Assembly: GCF_037042905.1 (NCBI RefSeq)
Contig: NC_087247.1
Coordinates: 25,048,001-25,112,000 of the forward strand
Length of the DNA: 64,000 nt
From: Lytechinus pictus
Lineage: Eukaryota
Reading direction: 5' to 3'
In this document: positions 3,301-41,100 of the stretch, piece after piece
Layout of the letters: each line of letters opens with the position of its first letter
Position numbering within the stretch: the stretch's first letter is position 1
The notes under the pieces: model-generated
Database searches by the model: none
The model's input: the letters and a program-made list of their open reading frames with translations, nothing else
What the model was told of the DNA's origin: nothing
Program-made: the position numbers and the translations under genes

Positions 3301-6300
3301 GAGAAAAGCTAGAATAAAAAAAAAACTCAGTCCAGAAATAGGTACAAGGTCATCAGACAGTGAAACATACAAAATTTGGAATGAAAAGAATAAAAAAATA
3401 GCCCTCTTCAAAAAAATATTACCCCTCCCTCTTTTTTGAATCATTGTTCATTTGATTATGAAAAATCACAGTCACGTTTTTGTTCATTCAATGAGAATTA
3501 AGTCAGCTGGGAATCAAAATGAAATAAAAACAATAATTGACTTAAGAAAAGCAATACCGGTACTGAAATTACAAGATTATTATATCTTTAATAGAAAAAG
3601 AAACACATGAGAAATTAATGAATTCATTCAAAACTGGAAGGAGTGACTCTGTATTTGTCAGAAATATGTAGCTGTAAAAAGATAAGCTTTACTTACCACT
3701 ATCACCCCAGCACCTTTTATTTGTACTGCTGAAAGGACAGAACTTAAACTGTCCCTTCATCCTACCGACAGACACCATATCCCTCGCTGGCACCTGAGCT
3801 CTGCAGATGTACTTGAAGCGTTGCATAAGAAGACCATCTTCAGACACATTATGAACCAACCAAGGAGTCCAGTCAGTTGGTCTACGAACCTCTGTAACGC
3901 AACAGGTAGAGTGGTTGTAATCATTTGCTTGAAAATTGCAAGATATTTGATTATTTTAAAAAAGGAACATAATCTTGGAGATCTCGACTGTTGTATCAAA
4001 TGTGATCAATACCAGTTGATGGAATTTAATGATAAATTTGAACTTGACCAATCCGATTCCACCATTATTAAATTAGCTTATAAGTTACCATTGATAACAA
4101 TGATTATTAAAATAGTGCCCTAATAGGGCACCTAATTATATTATTTTCTCTAACTTCCAATAAATACCTGTGGATCTATTATTTGTTATCTTGCAGAGAT
4201 CTTACCACAGCAGGTAACATGTTAAACAAATTTATTTAAAATTCCATATTCATTATCTTTTACTTATAATTACTTAAACTCATAAGTGTCAGACCATTAG
4301 AGCTGTCTGATAAAGTGTGAAAGTAAAAATACAACTGATTCAGAAGATTTCATTGATTGAAGACTAGTACTCACCTGAGCATGCTTGTTTATTACATTCT
4401 CTCGTTTGAGTTGAATCACCGATGCAGGCCTGTCCATTAACACAGTCTCTAACACGAGATTGAATTCCACCATTACACAGAGCAGAGCACTCTGTCCATA
4501 AACTCCATTCACCCCAGAATCCTAACAAATACAAATCAAGAATTAATTACAACAATTAAAAATGCTTTCAATATTATTAATAGTCGTAACATTGAAAAAT
4601 ATTTTGGAACATTTATGTATTTATTCTTAATTCAGGAACAATGACAGAATTCCATGAAACACCTTTTGAGTGGTTTTCACCAAGCAATTTTCTTTCCAAT
4701 GAGATGCCAGAATTTCAGTAGCTTATAACAATTGATATTCATACCAAATAACTTCATGAAATGCTTCCCAAGTGGGTCTCATACAGAATCTTTTTTTAGA
4801 TTTACAGGAGCTTATGGTAAAAGCTTTTGTCAATCTCAATACAAGAATGACAAATTTATTACAATAGAAAAGAACAAATTTTTGAAGCACATGATAAACA
4901 AAATTTGTTACATCCACCAGAACGTTCATGATTATGCATAGACATGATACCATGATATGATACAATGATTGATGGATGCAAAATAATAGAGCAAATTTCT
5001 TTCAAAAGTAAGCACATTCTCAACAGATCATAGGTATTTGTATTTCATATGATGCAACCTTTGCTGTTTGTCATGCATATATCGTAAGTATTTTCACAGT
5101 TGGAAGATTCCATATAATTCTTAGTTTCATGGACTCGTTGCTTATGGGTCATGCTTTAATGCAATTTTTACTTCAAATAATATAAATCATAAATTAAATT
5201 GAAAGAAAAATTTAAGACAGAATTGAGAGATATACATATTTAACTCATATGAACAAGAAAGTTTTGTCTCTGAAGAAGCGACGATGCAGATAATCTGATT
5301 CATGCATGATAATAAAGACATGAACATGTATTATACATCTATTCTCACTTATTGATGATTTGGTCCCATGGTGTTCTTGTGAAGTAAAACAAAACCAATA
5401 AAGGTTGGACATCACCATTAAATATCAATGAGAAAAAGCTAAAGAGCTCATCATGTACAGAATAATGGCCAAAACAGATTGTATTCATGGAAGGCAGGTT
5501 AATTTTATCAAATATGTTCCTCTTTTTAATGTGCTATCAGAGGTAGATATGGAAGTATCATATAATGTTAAAGTCTTAATAAAGGCTGAAAGGCATGTCT
5601 TAAAATACCAATAATAAATGAAGGTAACATATTTTATTTCCAATTGAGGTATCTTCCTGTATTTTTGGTGGCAGCGGTGGGATTAATGAATATGAATGTG
5701 TATCATAACACCATCCCATTCAGGATTATGTAAATAATACAATTGTCTTGACCCAAACTTGCAAACTTGTGATAAGAGGATTTGACAATATATTTGCTGT
5801 TAAAGAATGCTAAAACCTTGAAAACAGGAAAGAAAGAAGGATGAAATGACAAAATGCACAACATGCACTCAAGTACCTGGCCTGTAATTATCAATTGCCG
5901 TGCCTGGACCGCTGTGGCCACTAGGTCTACCTGTACAGTTGACGACCTGCTGATACTCTCCTATACATGTAGTGCCCCCGCACTTGGGTGCCGGCGAGTC
6001 ACAGTCCCGGTAGCGGCACATACAGGCTTCAAGTCCTAGGGGGTCGGAGCACTGGGTCCAGTTGGACCACTCACCAAATTTGCCATCAACTGAGGAATTA
6101 AACAACAAATGTAATCATGAAAATATGTTTTCCACTGATTTGTGATTACATTCTCATACTAGGCATATTGTTTCAATGGAGCAAAGTTCGCTATTCAGTA
6201 TGCATGATAACACAATAACATTACAGAGTATTTAGGTATGAACTTGTTACTGTATATTCGATATCTGTAGGTACTGGCCTAACAATAACAAATTTCAAAT

Positions 6301-9300
6301 AAGGCACAATATAGTCATCCTATTCACAGCAATTACCGTACTTTCTTTAAAGCTTGCTACGGTGGTTTGATTTCTTGAGAAGCAAACATGAAGAGTATCC
6401 TACCTGTATTGTCCATGATAGGGCATCCTGTGATATCTTGTATCCAAACCTCAACCTCTAAAGGACTACAGGGGGGAAATAAAAGACAAAGAGATTTATT
6501 AATTAATTTTCTTTCCTCAATTCATCTTGTTTTTACTCTTATCCTCTGTTAAGCAATGAGATTCATATTTGTAATCAAATTATAAAGTCACTGATCAATA
6601 TCAATGTAAATAAGAGACACTTAACAATAGACATGAATAGATACATACAGATAATAATGGTCATTTTGCCTCCGACGAAGATTCTGCTAGGATCGAAAGC
6701 TTAGGCCCCTTTTTGACTTTCTAATACAGATAATATGAAAGAAGTTCATTTTATCTTCATCACTATACACATAGGTTTCTTTTTACAATCTGTTTGGAAA
6801 TGTCAATGCCTGGTTAGAGAGAAATTTCAACTGTCATGATGTTAAAAAAAATACAACACTTTTTTACTTCTATTTTATCATACTTTCTTTCTTAGAAAAA
6901 GAAACCATTGAAGAATAAAATCTCTCTTATGTTTACATGTCTCACATTGGTTAAGTCTGGAGAAGAAAGACTATCGGACAGCCATCATCCCCATGTATGT
7001 AACCAATGCCCTTTAGGCTTAGCCGGCAAACTCCCTCTGGAAAATGCTTCACAGACCTTAATCAAAACTTGATTTTGAGGCGACATCTTATCTCTGGGGT
7101 GAGGTCAGACAAAGTTCACTTGCAACATAGACCTACTTCATTCTCAAACACTTTGAAATTACAGATGGGACTCAAATTGAATGTTCCTTTTCCATTTTCT
7201 GATGTAACATTTCCGCTTTATCTTTCAAGCGCAGTGCCCTTTAGATTTTGTGAAGTAATGCTGTCAAGAAGTCATTAGAAGATGGAGGGAAGAATAATGG
7301 ATGGATTGTTTGCTGAATCGCTTCAAGTACTTCAGAAATGTACTTCGTCTTGTCTAGATCTTACATCGGGTCACATACTACAACTGCAAAAGGGAAATGA
7401 CTTATTCTCTTTTTTTATTTTTTAGAAGAGCTATTTACTTCATAAAAGATGCATTAAAAGGAAATATCTGTTTTCAAAATTGAGTGACCTCAAACCCTAA
7501 GAATAATAGTACTGAAATGTGGAAAAATATGACAAAATAGTTTAATCAGGAATATACACAGGAAGTCCCGTTACATGCCGATACACAAGCGAATGTCACA
7601 TTAATGCCTCTTGAATTGCTCCTACTAAAAGAAATATTGGAATTAGCGAATGATCTCTGCCAGTGACGTACCGCAGTGATTCAATGTCTGCTGAATCTAA
7701 ATAAATACCAAAAGGCTAGATTTGTTTCCCCATTTCAATTCTTGTCTGGATGAAAATTAGCCGAGTATTACTGGGATTGTGAACAACCCATTCATGTCAC
7801 ATCAAACAGCATTCTTCACACCAATATAATCTGACATGGATTATGATACATCCGGTCCATTCTCTACTCATACAAGCACCCCTGGAGACTATGCTCATAC
7901 TACATTCTCTTCAAACTAGCAGACTTTGGAGTCAATGTATCAGTTTGACAACATTCAGCCGATGTGATATGTGTAAGTGAATTGTAAAGTATGCTGTATG
8001 CAAACTTATAGCAAAAATATAGTAGGCATTATTATAATCTAAAAACAACCTAATTTGAATGAAAAGCCTGAGGTTTATAGTGCACCAAGTCAAACCATGA
8101 CAGAACTATACGTAACCATACAAGACAACTTGGTCTGGCTGTTATGAGATAACAATACTGGAAAATTATTTTTTACACCATTTGCTATTGGCTAAAAGTT
8201 AAGCTTATTTTTTTTGTAAAAATCTTTTACAAAGGCTTTAATGGCCATGTAAACTCTATGAAATATAACTTAATTAGGAAGGCATTAGGTCATGCCTTCT
8301 GTGAATGACCTCTAAGATATGTTGTCACCCATATACAGATGTTTGCAACAGGTTTTTATGATTTCCACCCTTCCGCTGAATGTCTTCATTATTTGCAAGT
8401 CTTGAGGACTACATTACAGACATCATATTCATGTAATATATCATGAATAATAAACAACTATATCAAGAAAGGAATTGCTGTGCATATCAGCATCAGTATG
8501 TCATCACAATGGCAGACTAGCATAGACTTGGCATATATAATATACACATATTGATATCTTTTATTTACCATACTTTGAAGTGAAACTGAATATTACAACA
8601 TTGTTTTGGAGTATAGTTTACATGCAGATATATGTGAAAAATGTCATCCTCGGTGGTCCACCATTCACTTCATTGGATGACCATTTATTACAAAGTTAAC
8701 ATCAGCCATTTGGAAAGAGTTTGTTGTCCGATTGTTTCCAAACAGCATAGGAGGGTCTTTATTGCTGCTGACATATAGAGATATCAAATGATATATGGTC
8801 TAATCTCCCTGGTGTGGTATATTATATATTATTTGATCCCTGTGATGATAGTATTGTTAGACAGCACCACAGGACAAGAGTATAAAAACATGGAACATCA
8901 CCAAATTATTCCCAGTTGGGAAAAAATATACAGATATACACAACTTCATTGTCCAAAATCGTGTAATAGTTTCACTTTTGCAAATTAAAATTTTCATGCA
9001 TATTCGTTTATGGATAGGCCTACATCTCTCTTCATTTATTTATTCTTTGGTATATCTCTTTTATTTCTTGATATGTTGTCCCCTTTTTCATTATCCATTG
9101 ATATGGACATCATTGAAGTACCTATTAACGTTAATAGCTTAGTAGGCCTATACATAAAGGGTGAGATTTTTGCTAATGAATTAAGAATGAATCTAAAAAA
9201 TCCAAATTGTGTTGTGGAGGTTAATAGGTTGTCTTTAAATCTTTCATCTCATAGATCATAATGGAATATTTAAAGCAAGCTACATAGAATGGATAAAGAT

Positions 9301-38100: not shown

Positions 38101-41100
38101 GATAAACTAGGAGATTAAGTGAGAGCATTATCAGTGTTTATTCTCTAGAAAGGAAATGTTGGATACTATCAGAGTCAGACTTGGGGAAGTGAAATGAAAA
38201 AATAAAGGATAGAGATGTTTAGGGCGGGTGAAAAGTTCCTCAAATACTCAAACTTTGAAGAAGAAAAATGAAATAGGATACCTGTTCCAATAATTGATAA
38301 TACTTTAAAGACAATGATTTTTCTCTCCATGATTTAGAAAATTCTTAAGATTTTAATGATGAAGTGTTATAATCTAGGTTGGTTCCATTTCTATGAGGGA
38401 AACTAATATAAAAGATAAAAAAGACTTAGCAAATACTTCCTTCACTTTCTGAAAAAAATGATATACTATTACCTTTAAAAAAGGAATTTAATTTTGTTGC
38501 AAACTTTGAATCACTGAAGGGTATTTTCTTCGATAAACTAAGCAACAGCAAACTTTTGAACTAATCATGAAAGGGAATGTTTTACCAGTATATAATTTCT
38601 TTTCTATAATCTTATGCCCATTGCACTCTAGACAAGCAAAACAATATTTACAATCAGAAATTTGTCCATATATTTCCAAGCACTTAAATAAATCCACTGA
38701 GACATTTCTCATCTAAATATCACAAAAACGAAAAATGAAATATTGTAAGAACAAATCTAATTTCTATGTTGAGATATAAAGCTTAGGTAGGAGTGAGTCT
38801 CGATGGAGAATTAGGGCAATGACCGGACGGACGAACCTCTTCTCGTTCAGAATTTATCCTTTCTTTTTCTGAGTTCAAGTTTCTCCTTCAAGCAGGGATT
38901 TCAACCAAAGTTTCTTTCTGCATTTCCAACAATACAAACTGTAATAAGATAAAAGCCGGTGCATTTTTGTTTGTTCCTTTAGAGCATTTCAAAAGGCAGA
39001 ATTATAAAACACAGTAATTGACCACCTACGGAAGATTTTCGAGCACTTTCCAGATGGCTTACAATTTGAAATATCACTTTCGTCATAATTGGGGCAGTTC
39101 TTTCATAAACAGTTCCTTTCTCTTCAAATTATATTAAGATGGGTGGTCTGCATAATACTCCCACTTGCCCACTAATATGCTCAAAAACATAATTTGCTCT
39201 TTTGTGATATTAACCAGCTTGCAAATATCATCCGATTGTATGAATAATTTCATCAAACTTTCATTGTGACCGCAATATATTTTTTGGCCTTTCCACTTAA
39301 GAATTTATATTCTTGTTCATATTTAATTTAAAATGTCTTTTTACCAAAATAAGAATGATTCCAGTAAACACACTAATTTCACCTTATACCCATATTGTAA
39401 CCCTTAAGCATTTAGTAACATTCAACAATTAAGAACTATCTCACAATTGGTAATAATTCAGCATCATTATTAGCATTTCAAGATACCTGCACCTTTCAAT
39501 AAGAATGCATTTCTTAATGATCCTCATTATGAATGCATCAAATCCTGCGATTATCATCCAGAATCCACCATCACTCATCGAAAACGAATTCATTCCGAGA
39601 TAAGAGTAAAGCAAAATAAAAGACCGGATCTAGGGTGCTTTATGGAAACACTTTTTCTCCGGGGAATGACAGATGCACAGATCCAGATGTGTTATTGATG
39701 ATGAGAATTTTAAAATCATTATGGACTTCACTATTTGAGTAAAAAGAAAATATGACAGAGATAAAAGAGGCTGGATTACCCACCCCCTCACATCCCCTTC
39801 ATATTCCCATTTGGAAGTTGGAATTGATAGTTTGGGATTGCATTAAGCAGTTTATGTTATTGTCAGCAATAATATTGTATTTCTTCTATTCAATCTAATA
39901 TTACTCAAAAAATTCATTATTATATCACTATATACAAGTGGGTGACATTTTTTTTTTGGTTTAGATATGACTCTAATGATAAAAAGAAGGTGTGCATATT
40001 GGTTTGAATTCACCCAGCTTTATATTACTTTACTTCTCTCGAAAACAGAAATAACGTATTATGAACTTTCGGCTAAAGACCAGTTACCATAAACATGAAT
40101 TCAATTCACTCCTGAGCTTTCTAATTCTGGTTAATACTGGGGTTACTAGATTCCAGGAATCAATGGGTTTATATGTATATTTCTTGCCAGCCTCTATAAC
40201 GTGAATTTGGCATGTCAATCAATCGTACAGTTCATGTGCCATTCATGTATGCTGGTTTTCAGTTGGTTATACCTGGGGCGAGAATGGTGCTTGAACATGA
40301 TGCTTCTTGCTAAAACAAGAAATGAAAAAGGGAAAGAATGCAACAGGGAGGGGTTAAGATAAGGGCCATGCAGGGACAGGAAGATGAAATAAGCTAGGGG
40401 AAAGAAAGGATGAGGGAAGGGGATAGTATGTTAAGGAATGGATAGGGGGAGATATCAAAACAAAAATAAGGAAGGGGGAAAGAGTATTAGAGGGAAGCGA
40501 AAGAAAGGAGAAGGAAGAAATCGGAAGGGAAAGAAGATAAGGAGTAGGGAGGGGAGAAGGAAGGAATAACAAAAAGGGAAAGAAGGACAAAGGACTGACA
40601 GGCAAGAGGTATGGAGAGAGAGAAGGAGATGAAGGAGAAGATTAAAGAAGATAGAAGCAGTGTAGGAAGGAGGTAGGGACAGATCAAAGGGAAAGTGAGT
40701 GAGAAGAAAAGTGAAAAGGGGATTGGAAGGTTGAGAGAAGGTAAGGAAGGGATGGGGTAAAAGAGGAGATAATGTAGGAACAAAGATTTACTGCATGGGA
40801 GGGAGAGCAGAAGAAAAATAGGAGAAAAGAAGAAAAATATCAGGGAATTAAAAAAAAAAAATTATGTTGAGCTTGAGCTTACCTCTGGGCTTGAGTTTGG
40901 TTTGGTGATCCACGCTGATGCTGCATTGGGCTGAAAGGTGAATGGACCTGAGAAGGCTTCGTTTATTGCCTCCAAGGTGAATGCACAGACAGCTGAGCCA
41001 TGGATGCTGTTGCTATAGTAACAGAAGGGAAATAAAGGGCATCATCATCTCTGTCGTGTGTCTGTTTACAGCAATTGTTGGATATGGTGGAAGTAAATTT

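What the first reader, a model, noticed from the sequence alone, without database searches (positions are those of the whole stretch)
6645..6735. 67-bp insertion with 12-bp TSD built around a minimal hammerhead-ribozyme-like fold
Seen: the perfect direct repeat ATACAGATAATA (6645-6656, 6724-6735) brackets 67 bp that contain a type I hammerhead topology: stem I GCCT/AGGC, core CCGACGA(A), stem II GATTCT/AGGATC with one G-U pair, GAAA, stem III collapsed to the palindrome AGCT, and a predicted cleavage triplet CUU (cut after 6702). Established: Penelope-like elements and retrozymes carry minimal type I hammerheads with a short palindromic stem III, thought to cleave as dimers, and they insert with variable-length TSDs. 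Unusual here: the U4-to-C core variant and an insert reduced to little more than the ribozyme. It is on the + strand, antisense to the Sema5 pre-mRNA, so it would not cut the host transcript. Inference: an ultra-short ribozyme-bearing retro-element or a severely truncated PLE terminal repeat, probably one of a large family.
Basis: partly seen in the sequence, partly recalled or inferred. Interest (0 to 1): 0.8.

Follow-up and report, generated by a model that had tools for sequence, protein, structure and literature searches.

The report
Solo hammerhead tail of Penelope retrotransposon
The 67-bp insert is a very short retrocopy holding only the hammerhead-ribozyme module of a young, high-copy Penelope-like jumping gene; this kind of element is already known, and the new details are an unusual core base and a sharply defined copy class.

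Summary
A perfect 12-bp duplication brackets 67 bp that match the known "minimal hammerhead" of Penelope-like elements (PLEs) in every feature except C in place of U4.

The insert is not an independent micro-element. It is the terminal module of an autonomous PLE of about 4.2 kb, laid out as hammerhead unit, optional 61-nt tail, 5'UTR, a 909-aa RT/GIY-YIG ORF, 3'UTR, then hammerhead unit.

- The 39-nt core occurs 1,236 times exactly in this genome.
- One family insertion still shows its empty site in RNA reads.
- About a third of units are solo copies or head-to-head pairs.
- Solo copies start within about 7 nt of GTCA, 30 nt downstream of a TATA box in the 3'UTR. They end at one of two fixed sites.

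My inference is that the PLE reverse transcriptase starts internally just after the hammerhead on short promoter read-out transcripts.

Helices I, II and the helix III palindrome covary across seven hammerheads from several PLE families. A close homologue, probably from a sea cucumber, has the canonical U4, so C4 is derived here.

Only 3 copies begin at the predicted cleavage site. RNA reads show no cleavage signal and Rfam gives no hit, so self-cleavage remains unproven.

Other windows of this scan had already noted PLE hammerheads in this genome.

The parts
6645..6656 (.). Left copy of the target-site duplication, ATACAGATAATA
   Evidence: Perfect direct repeat of 6724-6735. Other solo copies of the family carry unrelated duplications of 7-26 bp.
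6657..6659 (+). Junction nucleotides ATG at the 5' end. They are either filler or part of an imperfect 14-nt duplication (ATACAGATAATA[A]TG). The G may be a non-templated, cap-type addition.
   Evidence: In the 3'UTR context the unit is preceded by TTT, not ATG. An extra G before GTCA is also seen inside head-to-head junctions, where it cannot come from target DNA.
6660..6723 (+). The 64-nt templated retrocopy: the complete hammerhead module of the PLE, from the predicted transcript start (GTCA) to reverse-transcription start site 1 (CTTTCTA)
   Evidence: 100% identical to many other copies. The same stretch ends the PLE 3'UTR in L037-L045.
6660..6663 (+). GTCA: hot spot for 5' ends (inferred transcription start / Inr-like TCA). 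It is also the outer strand of helix I, pairing with TGAC at 6714-6717.
   Evidence: 12 of 41 unbiased units start within about 7 nt of this point. The outer helix appears in the minimum-free-energy fold. GTCA is kept at the same spacing in L091 and L086.
6668..6671 (+). Helix I, 5' strand (GCCT)
   Evidence: Pairs with 6703-6706. All 4 pairs show changes on both sides across families.
6672..6679 (+). Catalytic box CCGACGA (C3-A9, with C instead of U at position 4, base 6673) plus the unpaired A between positions 9 and 10.1
   Evidence: C4 is specific to this family in the genome. The unpaired nucleotide is a defining min-HHR trait (PMC4209133).
6680..6694 (+). Helix II hairpin: GATTCT, loop GCT, AGGATC (G10.1-C11.1 closing pair, one G-U pair)
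   Evidence: Fold. 4 of 6 pairs change on both sides; G10.1-C11.1 is invariant in 7/7 sequences.
6695..6702 (+). GAAA box, palindromic helix III remnant AGCT (15.1-16.1) and H17 = U. Predicted cleavage lies between 6702 and 6703.
   Evidence: The 15.2/16.2 pair is GC, CG or AU in relatives and always complementary.
6703..6706 (+). Helix I, 3' strand (AGGC)
6718..6723 (+). Reverse-transcription start site 1: family copies end at GACTTT, GACTTTC, GACTTTCT or GACTTTCTA
   Evidence: 3' junctions of 40+ copies. The alternative site 2 lies 61 nt further on, at the end of the optional tail, which this copy lacks.
6724..6735 (.). Right copy of the target-site duplication

Best explanation
SHOWN. The insert is a 64-nt retrocopy consisting only of the hammerhead module of a very young autonomous Penelope-like retrotransposon of about 4.2 kb. 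The layout is unit(64) - optional tail(61) - 5'UTR - 909-aa RT/Zn-linker/GIY-YIG ORF - about 0.93-kb 3'UTR - unit. Copies carry variable duplications, scattered 5' truncations, two alternative 3' ends and head-to-head pairs. About a third of all units are solo units or inverted pairs whose 5' ends fall within about 7 nt of GTCA. The motif is a homologue of PLE minimal type I hammerheads; helices I, II and the helix III palindrome covary, and U4C is derived.

INFERRED.
- A TATA box 30-33 nt upstream of GTCA, in the end of the 3'UTR, drives transcripts that begin with the hammerhead and read out into flanking DNA.
- The PLE reverse transcriptase, acting in trans, starts internally just 3' of the hammerhead (site 1) or after the tail (site 2). 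It copies to the capped 5' end and leaves 64- or 125-nt insertions.
- Priming from both nicked target strands gives the head-to-head pairs.
- The solo copy lacks the promoter and a partner hammerhead, and it is antisense in the Sema5-like intron. It is therefore inert at this locus.
- Self-cleavage by this C4 minimal hammerhead is probably weak or needs a dimer or protein. It is not needed to make these copies.

The confidence of 0.8 is for identity as a PLE hammerhead-module retrocopy. For the promoter read-out / internal-initiation mechanism alone I put about 0.55.
For: Family and PLE link:
- Copy number.
- ORF with GIY-YIG upstream of the 3'UTR and unit in L041, L042, L044 and L045.
- More than 100 ORF copies at 94-100% identity, many with 909-aa open frames.
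- Full-length relatives with RVT_1 + GIY-YIG.
- 5'UTR places next to ORF places, and a tandem-type copy at C2:55541094-55545287.

Census of 41 units taken in positional order on C1:
- 9 extend more than 1.3 kb upstream.
- 17 are truncated at scattered points over about 1,300 nt.
- 12 start at the unit edge.
- 2 are head-to-head pairs.
- Genome-wide, 789 of 1,317 units are preceded by the 3'UTR end.

Duplications of 7-26 bp and two clusters of 3' ends. This matches the two internal RT start sites and the optional tail shown in vitro for a PLE, which also extends both target strands (PMC11167929).

Head-to-head pairs are enclosed by a single 14-15-bp duplication, join at GTCA and carry an extra G there.

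TATA at -33..-27, the TCA, and the whole unit are 100% identical across subfamilies whose UTRs differ by 15-25%.

Hammerhead homology:
- Match to the min-HHR definition.
- 1,496 canonical min-HHRs in this genome against 23 for the control.
- Covariation: 93.7% of cells paired against 66% in shuffles, and 9 of 12 pairs changed on both sides.
- The L091 homologue reads GTCATTTAGCCT-CTGAAGA-A-GATCCTGCTAGGATC-GAAACGTC-AGGC.

Recent activity: RNA reads span the empty site of the L003 insertion.
Against: - There is no direct mapping of the transcript start. Raw RNA-seq showed no pile-up of read starts at GTCA and roughly equal coverage of both strands over the unit.
- The L091 homologue has no TATA box at the same place, and in L086 the TATA-to-TCA spacing points 12 nt upstream of its GTCA.
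- In the unbiased sample the 5' ends are ragged (GGTCA, TCA, CA, TTTT), and the extra G is a minority.
- Rfam hammerhead models give no hit even at E <= 10.
- The fold is no more stable than shuffles.
- U4 is normally conserved, and U4C lowers activity in vitro (PMC3088659).
Confidence: 0.8

Rival explanations
1. Solo units are ordinary 5'-truncated copies. The hot spot at the unit edge is a reverse-transcriptase pause or template-switch point on long PLE RNA, caused by the folded hammerhead or a bound protein, and not the RNA's 5' end.
For: 5' truncation is pervasive in the family: 17 scattered ends in 41 units. No read-start pile-up at GTCA in RNA-seq. Ragged 5' ends.
Against: - The pause would have to fall after the enzyme has already unwound the whole hammerhead.
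- Full-length-type copies (L003, L046) begin at the same point.
- Head-to-head pairs join there with an extra G that neither template nor target supplies.
- A TATA box sits at the canonical distance and is conserved between subfamilies.
Confidence: 0.25
2. Solo units are 'solo pseudo-LTRs' left by recombination between the two 64-nt direct repeats of a complete insertion, as with solo LTRs.
For: L003 shows unit...unit flanked by one 9-bp duplication. Recombination between the two units would leave exactly a solo unit with its duplication.
Against: - Copies carrying the 5' unit/5'UTR are few, about 67 candidates, against roughly 400-500 solo or inverted units.
- The family is 98-100% identical and still polymorphic, which leaves little time for recombination.
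- 64 bp is a poor recombination substrate.
- Recombination does not explain head-to-head pairs with a single duplication.
Confidence: 0.05
3. The C4 hammerhead is an active ribozyme that cleaves in vivo as a dimer or with PLE protein help and processes PLE transcripts. U4C is a tolerated or selected tuning of activity.
For: - Every change relative to the L091 homologue except U4C obeys hammerhead rules.
- The core and helices are unchanged between subfamilies with diverged UTRs.
- A second, unrelated PLE (L086) also carries CCGACGA with compensated helices.
- A viroid U4C variant stays viable in vivo (PMC3088659).
- Another PLE hammerhead cleaves only with its protein present (PMC11167929).
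Against: - Only 3 copies in the genome begin at the predicted cleavage site.
- RNA reads show no begin/end signal.
- Minimal PLE hammerheads cleave poorly even with a canonical core.
- Catalytic mutants of another PLE hammerhead insert normally in vitro.
- The conservation could equally serve RT recognition or promoter-proximal function.
Confidence: 0.3
4. It is an independent non-autonomous element (animal retrozyme, SINE or MITE) that merely resembles a PLE end.
For: Very short; occurs dispersed. Inverted pairs could look like MITE terminal repeats.
Against: - The sequence is identical to the terminal 64 nt of ORF-bearing copies.
- There are no tandem monomer arrays among 100 listed places.
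- Duplication length varies from 7 to 26 bp, unlike a DNA transposon.
- The unit carries no promoter of its own; the TATA box lies upstream in the 3'UTR.
Confidence: 0.03

Closest known systems
Minimal type I hammerheads (min-HHR) of metazoan Penelope-like elements (Cervera & De la Pena 2014, PMC4209133)
   Same: - No helix III loop, with palindromic 15.2-16.2.
- Unpaired nucleotide between A9 and G10.1.
- G10.1-C11.1 closing pair.
- Long helix II (6 bp) and short helix I (4 bp).
- Located in the terminal repeat of a PLE.
- Mostly found as single dispersed motifs or inverted pairs.
   Different: - Core position 4 is C instead of U. It is fixed in about 97% of this family's copies, while the other min-HHR families of the same genome keep U4.
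- Copies are nearly identical rather than highly variable, as in the D. virilis reinvasion case described in that paper.
PAc (Poseidon, Anolis carolinensis) PLE, internal initiation of reverse transcription (Frangieh et al. 2024, PMC11167929)
   Same: - Two adjacent RT start sites downstream of the hammerhead, giving an optional 'tail'.
- Both target strands are used as primers.
- AT-rich targets.
- Hammerhead cleavage is dispensable for insertion.
   Different: - Here the tail is 61 nt rather than 30-40 nt.
- Site 1 is only 14-20 nt past the predicted cut.
- The hammerhead lies about 0.5 kb upstream of the ORF rather than overlapping its start.
- The evidence here is genomic footprints, not biochemistry.
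Homologous PLE in assembly GCA_002754855.1 (locus L091; to my knowledge the sea cucumber Apostichopus japonicus, not checked with a tool)
   Same: - ORF end 73% identical in protein.
- The hammerhead module is alignable base by base, including GTCATTT, GCCT/AGGC and the GCU loop.
- Present as an inverted pair.
   Different: - Canonical U4.
- Perfect helix II (C-G where the urchin has U-G).
- CG instead of GC at 15.2/16.2.
- H17 = C.
Animal non-LTR retrozymes (Cervera & De la Pena 2020, PMC7229834; bioRxiv 10.64898/2026.07.22.740005)
   Same: Short ORF-less sequences with type I hammerheads, thought to be mobilised by PLE enzymes.
   Different: Retrozymes are tandem arrays of monomers that give circular RNAs. 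Here the units are single, dispersed, 64 or 125 nt long, and show no sign of tandem or circular forms.
Viroid hammerhead with natural U4C (cited in Perreault et al. 2011, PMC3088659)
   Same: The same core substitution occurs in a replicating natural RNA.
   Different: Different hammerhead architecture (viroid, not PLE minimal type) and a different biological setting.

Membership tests
Hammerhead ribozyme, PLE minimal type I (min-HHR) | Catalytic box C3-U4-G5-A6-N7-G8-A9 | tested here: not met
   The window reads CCGACGA: 6 of 7 positions fit, with U4 replaced by C. C4 is fixed in this family, about 81 C4 against 2 U4 copies on contig C1.
Hammerhead ribozyme, PLE minimal type I (min-HHR) | Box G12-A13-A14, then A15.1...U16.1 with complementary (palindromic) 15.2/16.2 and H17 not G | tested here: met
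   GAAA-GC-U-U at 6695-6702. The 15.2/16.2 pair is complementary in 7/7 aligned relatives, as GC, CG or AU.
Hammerhead ribozyme, PLE minimal type I (min-HHR) | Helix II closed by G10.1-C11.1, 6-8 bp, with an unpaired nucleotide between A9 and G10.1 | tested here: met
   A6679 is unpaired. GATTCT/AGGATC forms 6 bp. G10.1-C11.1 is invariant, and 4 of 6 pairs covary.
Hammerhead ribozyme, PLE minimal type I (min-HHR) | Helix I of 4-5 bp flanking the core, open-ended (type I) | tested here: met
   GCCT/AGGC. All 4 pairs show changes on both sides across families.
Hammerhead ribozyme, PLE minimal type I (min-HHR) | Self-cleavage 3' of H17 | not testable with these tools
   Indirect evidence is negative: only 3 genomic copies begin at the site, and no read ends pile up there in RNA-seq.
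Hammerhead ribozyme (Rfam models) | Match to a curated hammerhead covariance model | tested here: not met
   No hammerhead hit at E <= 10 in 6500-6900, and none at the gathering score anywhere in the window. From my own knowledge, not tested here: the Rfam models expect a helix III hairpin, which minimal PLE hammerheads lack.
Penelope-like element (EN+ PLE) | [quoted passage not shown] | tested here: met
   RYIDDIFF, CX4CxxC and GIY-YIG in L042:3-1139. 909-aa open frames. Full-length relatives with RVT_1 + GIY-YIG.
Penelope-like element (EN+ PLE) | Pseudo-LTRs from partial tandems, frequent 5' truncation, and inverted 5' copies | tested here: met
   - Unit at both ends of L003.
- Tandem-type junction at C2:55541094 followed by 5'UTR and ORF.
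- 17 scattered truncations in 41 units.
- Head-to-head pairs with one duplication.
Penelope-like element (EN+ PLE) | Optional 'tail' extension, i.e. two alternative 3' ends | tested here: met
   Copies end at CTTTCTA or 61 nt later at GCC(AT). The tail is longer than the 30-40 bp reported in the literature.
Penelope-like element (EN+ PLE) | Hammerhead motif in the terminal repeat, in sense orientation | tested here: met
   The unit lies at the 3' end of the 3'UTR on the ORF strand in L041, L042, L044 and L045.
Animal non-LTR retrozyme | Tandem arrays of hammerhead-bearing monomers and circular RNA products | tested here: not met
   No direct tandem neighbours among the 100 listed unit places. 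The 'goes back' RNA joints are explained by 3'UTR-unit-tail copies.

The most novel reading that the evidence does not exclude
The solo units and head-to-head pairs are in vivo footprints of the whole PLE integration pathway acting on a minimal substrate. A capped read-out transcript begins at the hammerhead. Reverse transcription starts internally at either of two sites just 3' of it, and both target strands prime. Under this reading the hammerhead module, with its lineage-fixed U4C core, is the self-contained RNA signal that the PLE enzyme recognises. Its sequence would then be conserved for that role, or for protein-assisted cleavage, rather than for fast self-cleavage.
Probability: 0.4. 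Interest if true: 0.55.

Novelty: new member of a known kind. Interest (0 to 1): 0.38.

Why it matters
For this locus it matters little. The insert is a neutral, promoter-less, antisense intronic insertion.

For mobile-element biology the family is a clean natural dataset. It offers hundreds of near-identical 64/125-nt retrocopies with exact ends, duplications and inverted-pair junctions, from an element that is still polymorphic.

These footprints independently match three in vitro claims made for a lizard PLE in 2024: internal initiation at two sites, an optional tail, and priming from both target strands. They also suggest where PLE transcripts start.

The family further shows that a hammerhead with a normally forbidden U4C core can sit in the most successful PLE of a genome. 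This bears on the open question of whether PLE hammerheads act as ribozymes at all.

Tried and rejected
- **Rfam**: no hammerhead hit, only noise-level snoRNA and other matches.
- **Thermodynamic support:** z = -0.59, so stability alone says nothing.
- **A ~126-bp, then a ~630-bp, then a 1.07-kb (L003) non-autonomous element:** I read the family each of these ways in turn and rejected each once the ORF was found upstream of the '565-bp body'. L003 is an ORF-deleted derivative.
- **'GGTCA' as the element start:** partly an artefact, because my first search ranked copies by likeness to the window's own junction (against 24, 61).
- **MITE or DNA-transposon reading of the inverted pairs:** rejected because of variable duplications and 5' truncation.
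- **Retrozyme or circular-RNA reading:** no tandem arrays, and the RNA 'goes back' joints are trivial.
- **Hammerhead-cleaved RNA as template:** rejected; only 3 copies fit.
- **RNA-seq for transcript start or cleavage**: no begin/end pile-ups, coverage on both strands, bins too coarse. Inconclusive.
- **Empty-site test of the window copy itself:** not done.
- **The look-up of encoding contigs:** L087, L089 and L090 had flanks too short to show a hammerhead.
- **Earlier scan notes by sequence:** blank.
Full report
**Observation**

The window carries ATACAGATAATA at 6645-6656 and again at 6724-6735, with 67 bp between.
- helix I GCCT/AGGC
- core CCGACGA
- an unpaired A
- helix II GATTCT/AGGATC with one G-U pair
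- GAAA
- the palindrome AGCT
- U at position 17, giving a predicted cut after 6702

The minimum-free-energy fold reproduces helices I and II and adds an outer helix GUCA/UGAC. It is no more stable than shuffled sequence (z = -0.59). Rfam finds no hammerhead even at E <= 10.

The host gene is on the minus strand, with a Sema exon at 40865-41041 and TSP1 exons at or below 6114. The insert is therefore intronic and antisense.

**Family size and forms**

The 67-mer has dozens of 100% matches in the same genome. The 39-nt core occurs 1,236 times exactly, against 0 for the reversed control.

Reading the flanks of the copies shows several forms:
- The unit alone, 64 nt, ending CTTTCTA.
- The unit plus a 61-nt tail ending GCC(AT).
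- 3'UTR plus unit, with or without the tail.
- Head-to-head pairs.
- A 1.07-kb copy (L003) with a unit at both ends and a 9-bp duplication.

I first took these for small non-autonomous elements. That was wrong.

**Link to a Penelope-like element**

Loci found through the sequence upstream of the unit carry a long open frame on the same strand, about 360 nt further upstream. It holds the RT motif RYIDDIFF, a CX4CxxC linker and a GIY-YIG domain.
- The genome holds more than 100 copies of this ORF end at 94-100% identity. Many lie in 909-aa open frames.
- Full-length relatives elsewhere have RVT_1 plus GIY-YIG.
- The segment that follows unit and tail in L003 lies just upstream of the ORF in other copies (places).
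- At C2:55541094 a 3'UTR-linked unit is followed by tail, 5'UTR, ORF, 3'UTR and a second unit 4,160 nt later.

The element is therefore a canonical EN+ PLE of about 4.2 kb, and L003 is an ORF-deleted copy. RNA reads span the empty site of L003 (joint 493->1573 with 9 shared letters). The family is still polymorphic.

**Census**

I took 41 units in positional order along contig C1, so they were not ranked by similarity.

| Class | Units |
|---|---|
| Extend more than 1.3 kb upstream | 9 |
| Truncated at scattered points over about 1,300 nt | 17 |
| Start within about 7 nt of the unit's 5' edge | 12 |
| Head-to-head pairs | 2 |

The scattered truncations predict about 0.1 ends in a 7-nt window, so the edge is a roughly 100-fold hot spot. 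Genome-wide, 789 of 1,317 units are preceded by the 3'UTR end. That leaves about 40% solo, inverted or mutated at the junction.

Solo copies have duplications of 7-26 bp. Their 5' ends fall at G, T, C or A of GTCATTTT. Their 3' ends fall at GACTTT(C)(T)(A) or at GCC(A)(T). The 'GGTCA' start I first inferred was partly a bias of my similarity-ranked search.

**Mechanism (inference)**

Published in vitro work on a lizard PLE shows three things (PMC11167929):
- Reverse transcription starts internally at two adjacent sites, which explains an optional tail.
- Both target strands are cleaved and extended.
- Hammerhead mutants insert normally.

The footprints here match each point. There are two clusters of 3' ends. 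Head-to-head pairs are enclosed by one 14-15-bp duplication, each arm running from an RT start site to GTCA.

In the 3'UTR context a TATATTA box lies 33-27 nt upstream of the A of GTCA. This stretch and the unit are 100% identical in subfamilies whose UTRs otherwise differ by 15-25%. Inside inverted junctions the full arm ends GGTCA. That extra G is supplied by neither template nor target, as expected from copying a cap.

I therefore infer that transcripts start at GTCA. Any copy that keeps the 3'UTR end produces read-out RNA beginning with the hammerhead. The PLE enzyme copies just the first 64 or 125 nt of it.

This also explains why a single full copy, which begins at GTCA without the promoter, cannot renew itself. 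Cervera & De la Pena (PMC4209133) cite the known PLE need for more-than-unit copies.

The weak points are these:
- RNA-seq gave no start pile-up and showed both strands.
- Relatives do not keep the TATA position.
- The 5' ends are ragged.

**Is it a hammerhead?**

The motif meets the published min-HHR definition for PLEs: no helix III loop, palindromic 15.2/16.2, an unpaired base after A9, G10.1-C11.1, a long helix II and a short helix I. The one exception is U4.

The genome holds 1,496 canonical-core min-HHRs of at least eight families, against 23 for the reversed control. The C4 form gives 1,562 matches against 13, and almost all are this one family.

A related PLE in GCA_002754855.1 (73% protein identity over the ORF end) carries a base-by-base homologue with U4. 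Compared with that homologue, the urchin copy has:
- C in place of U4
- a U-G pair where the homologue has C-G in helix II
- GC in place of CG at 15.2/16.2
- U in place of C at H17

Across seven sequences from several families and sources, 93.7% of cells pair, against 66% in shuffles and 26-42% in slid controls. Nine of 12 pairs change on both sides. None of the search patterns required helix I pairing, or helix II pairing beyond G10.1-C11.1.

C4 is therefore a derived state. It predates the subfamily split within this genome. It also recurs in an unrelated PLE with different, compensated helices (L086).

**Does it cleave?**

This is unknown.
- Only 3 copies genome-wide begin at the predicted cut.
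- RNA reads show no ends there.
- U4C lowers activity in vitro but is viable in a viroid (PMC3088659).
- Minimal PLE hammerheads cleave poorly in any case.

I put appreciable in vivo cleavage at about 30%. In this solo, antisense, promoter-less copy the question is moot.

**Verdict**

The kind has been known since 2014.

Three details are added here: the fixed U4C core in the genome's most prolific PLE, the sharply defined 64/125-nt copy class, and in vivo footprints that agree with the 2024 biochemistry.

Other windows of this scan had already noted PLE hammerheads in this genome. I used those notes only as leads.

Noticed in passing
L039:2163-2212 (+), about 40 nt downstream of this family's unit; also L015:863-912: A second PLE min-HHR family, GCTT-CTGACGA-A-GTCT...AGAC-GAAAGCTA-AAGC, sits right next to a unit of the family studied here. 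This suggests PLE insertions land beside or into one another.
   Followed up: partly
L003:493-1573 (own genome C18, about 7.37 Mb): RNA reads from other individuals join the two flanks across the 1.07-kb ORF-deleted PLE copy with 9 shared letters. That is an empty-site allele, so this insertion is polymorphic.
   Followed up: partly
L003:516-824 (family 3'UTR): Stranded RNA-seq shows about 2.7-fold more pairs with the first mate on the minus strand over the 3'UTR, but near parity over unit plus tail. If the library is the usual dUTP type, this would mean mostly antisense RNA over the 3'UTR. Unexplained.
   Followed up: no
L091:2559-2616 (-) and 3859-3916 (+), assembly GCA_002754855.1: The homologous U4 hammerhead occurs as an inverted pair flanking the ORF fragment. 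The two arms share 60 nt upstream and diverge right after helix I (AGGC).
   Followed up: partly
L086:3140-3227 (ENA assembly ERZ27293352): A distant PLE (46% protein identity) carries a second C4 hammerhead, CCGACGA-A-GGAC...GTCC-GAAAGCTC, with a TATAAA box about 53 nt upstream of C3 and a GGTCA 7 nt before the core.
   Followed up: partly
Own genome, one search places (e.g. C12:20573502-20573976): The PLE 5'UTR carries a roughly 120-nt segment repeated about 37 nt downstream in most copies. The start of the 909-aa frame falls in the second repeat. L003 has only one copy of the segment.
   Followed up: no
L031:4314-7226 (-): An intact-looking 971-aa LINE ORF (Exo_endo_phos + RVT_1) lies a few kb from a solo unit. 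It is unrelated to the PLE.
   Followed up: no
L004:1517-1640 and L079, L055: Some junctions are complex. L004 has a duplicated GGAGGCAAAATGACC segment between inverted arms. L079 and L055 have partial internal duplications or fold-backs within the unit. These look like template-switch products.
   Followed up: no
runs X5-X14 (organism B): Runs of a second organism hold 16-21% of the sampled words of the L003 element. Near-identical pieces of this PLE therefore exist in a related species.
   Followed up: no
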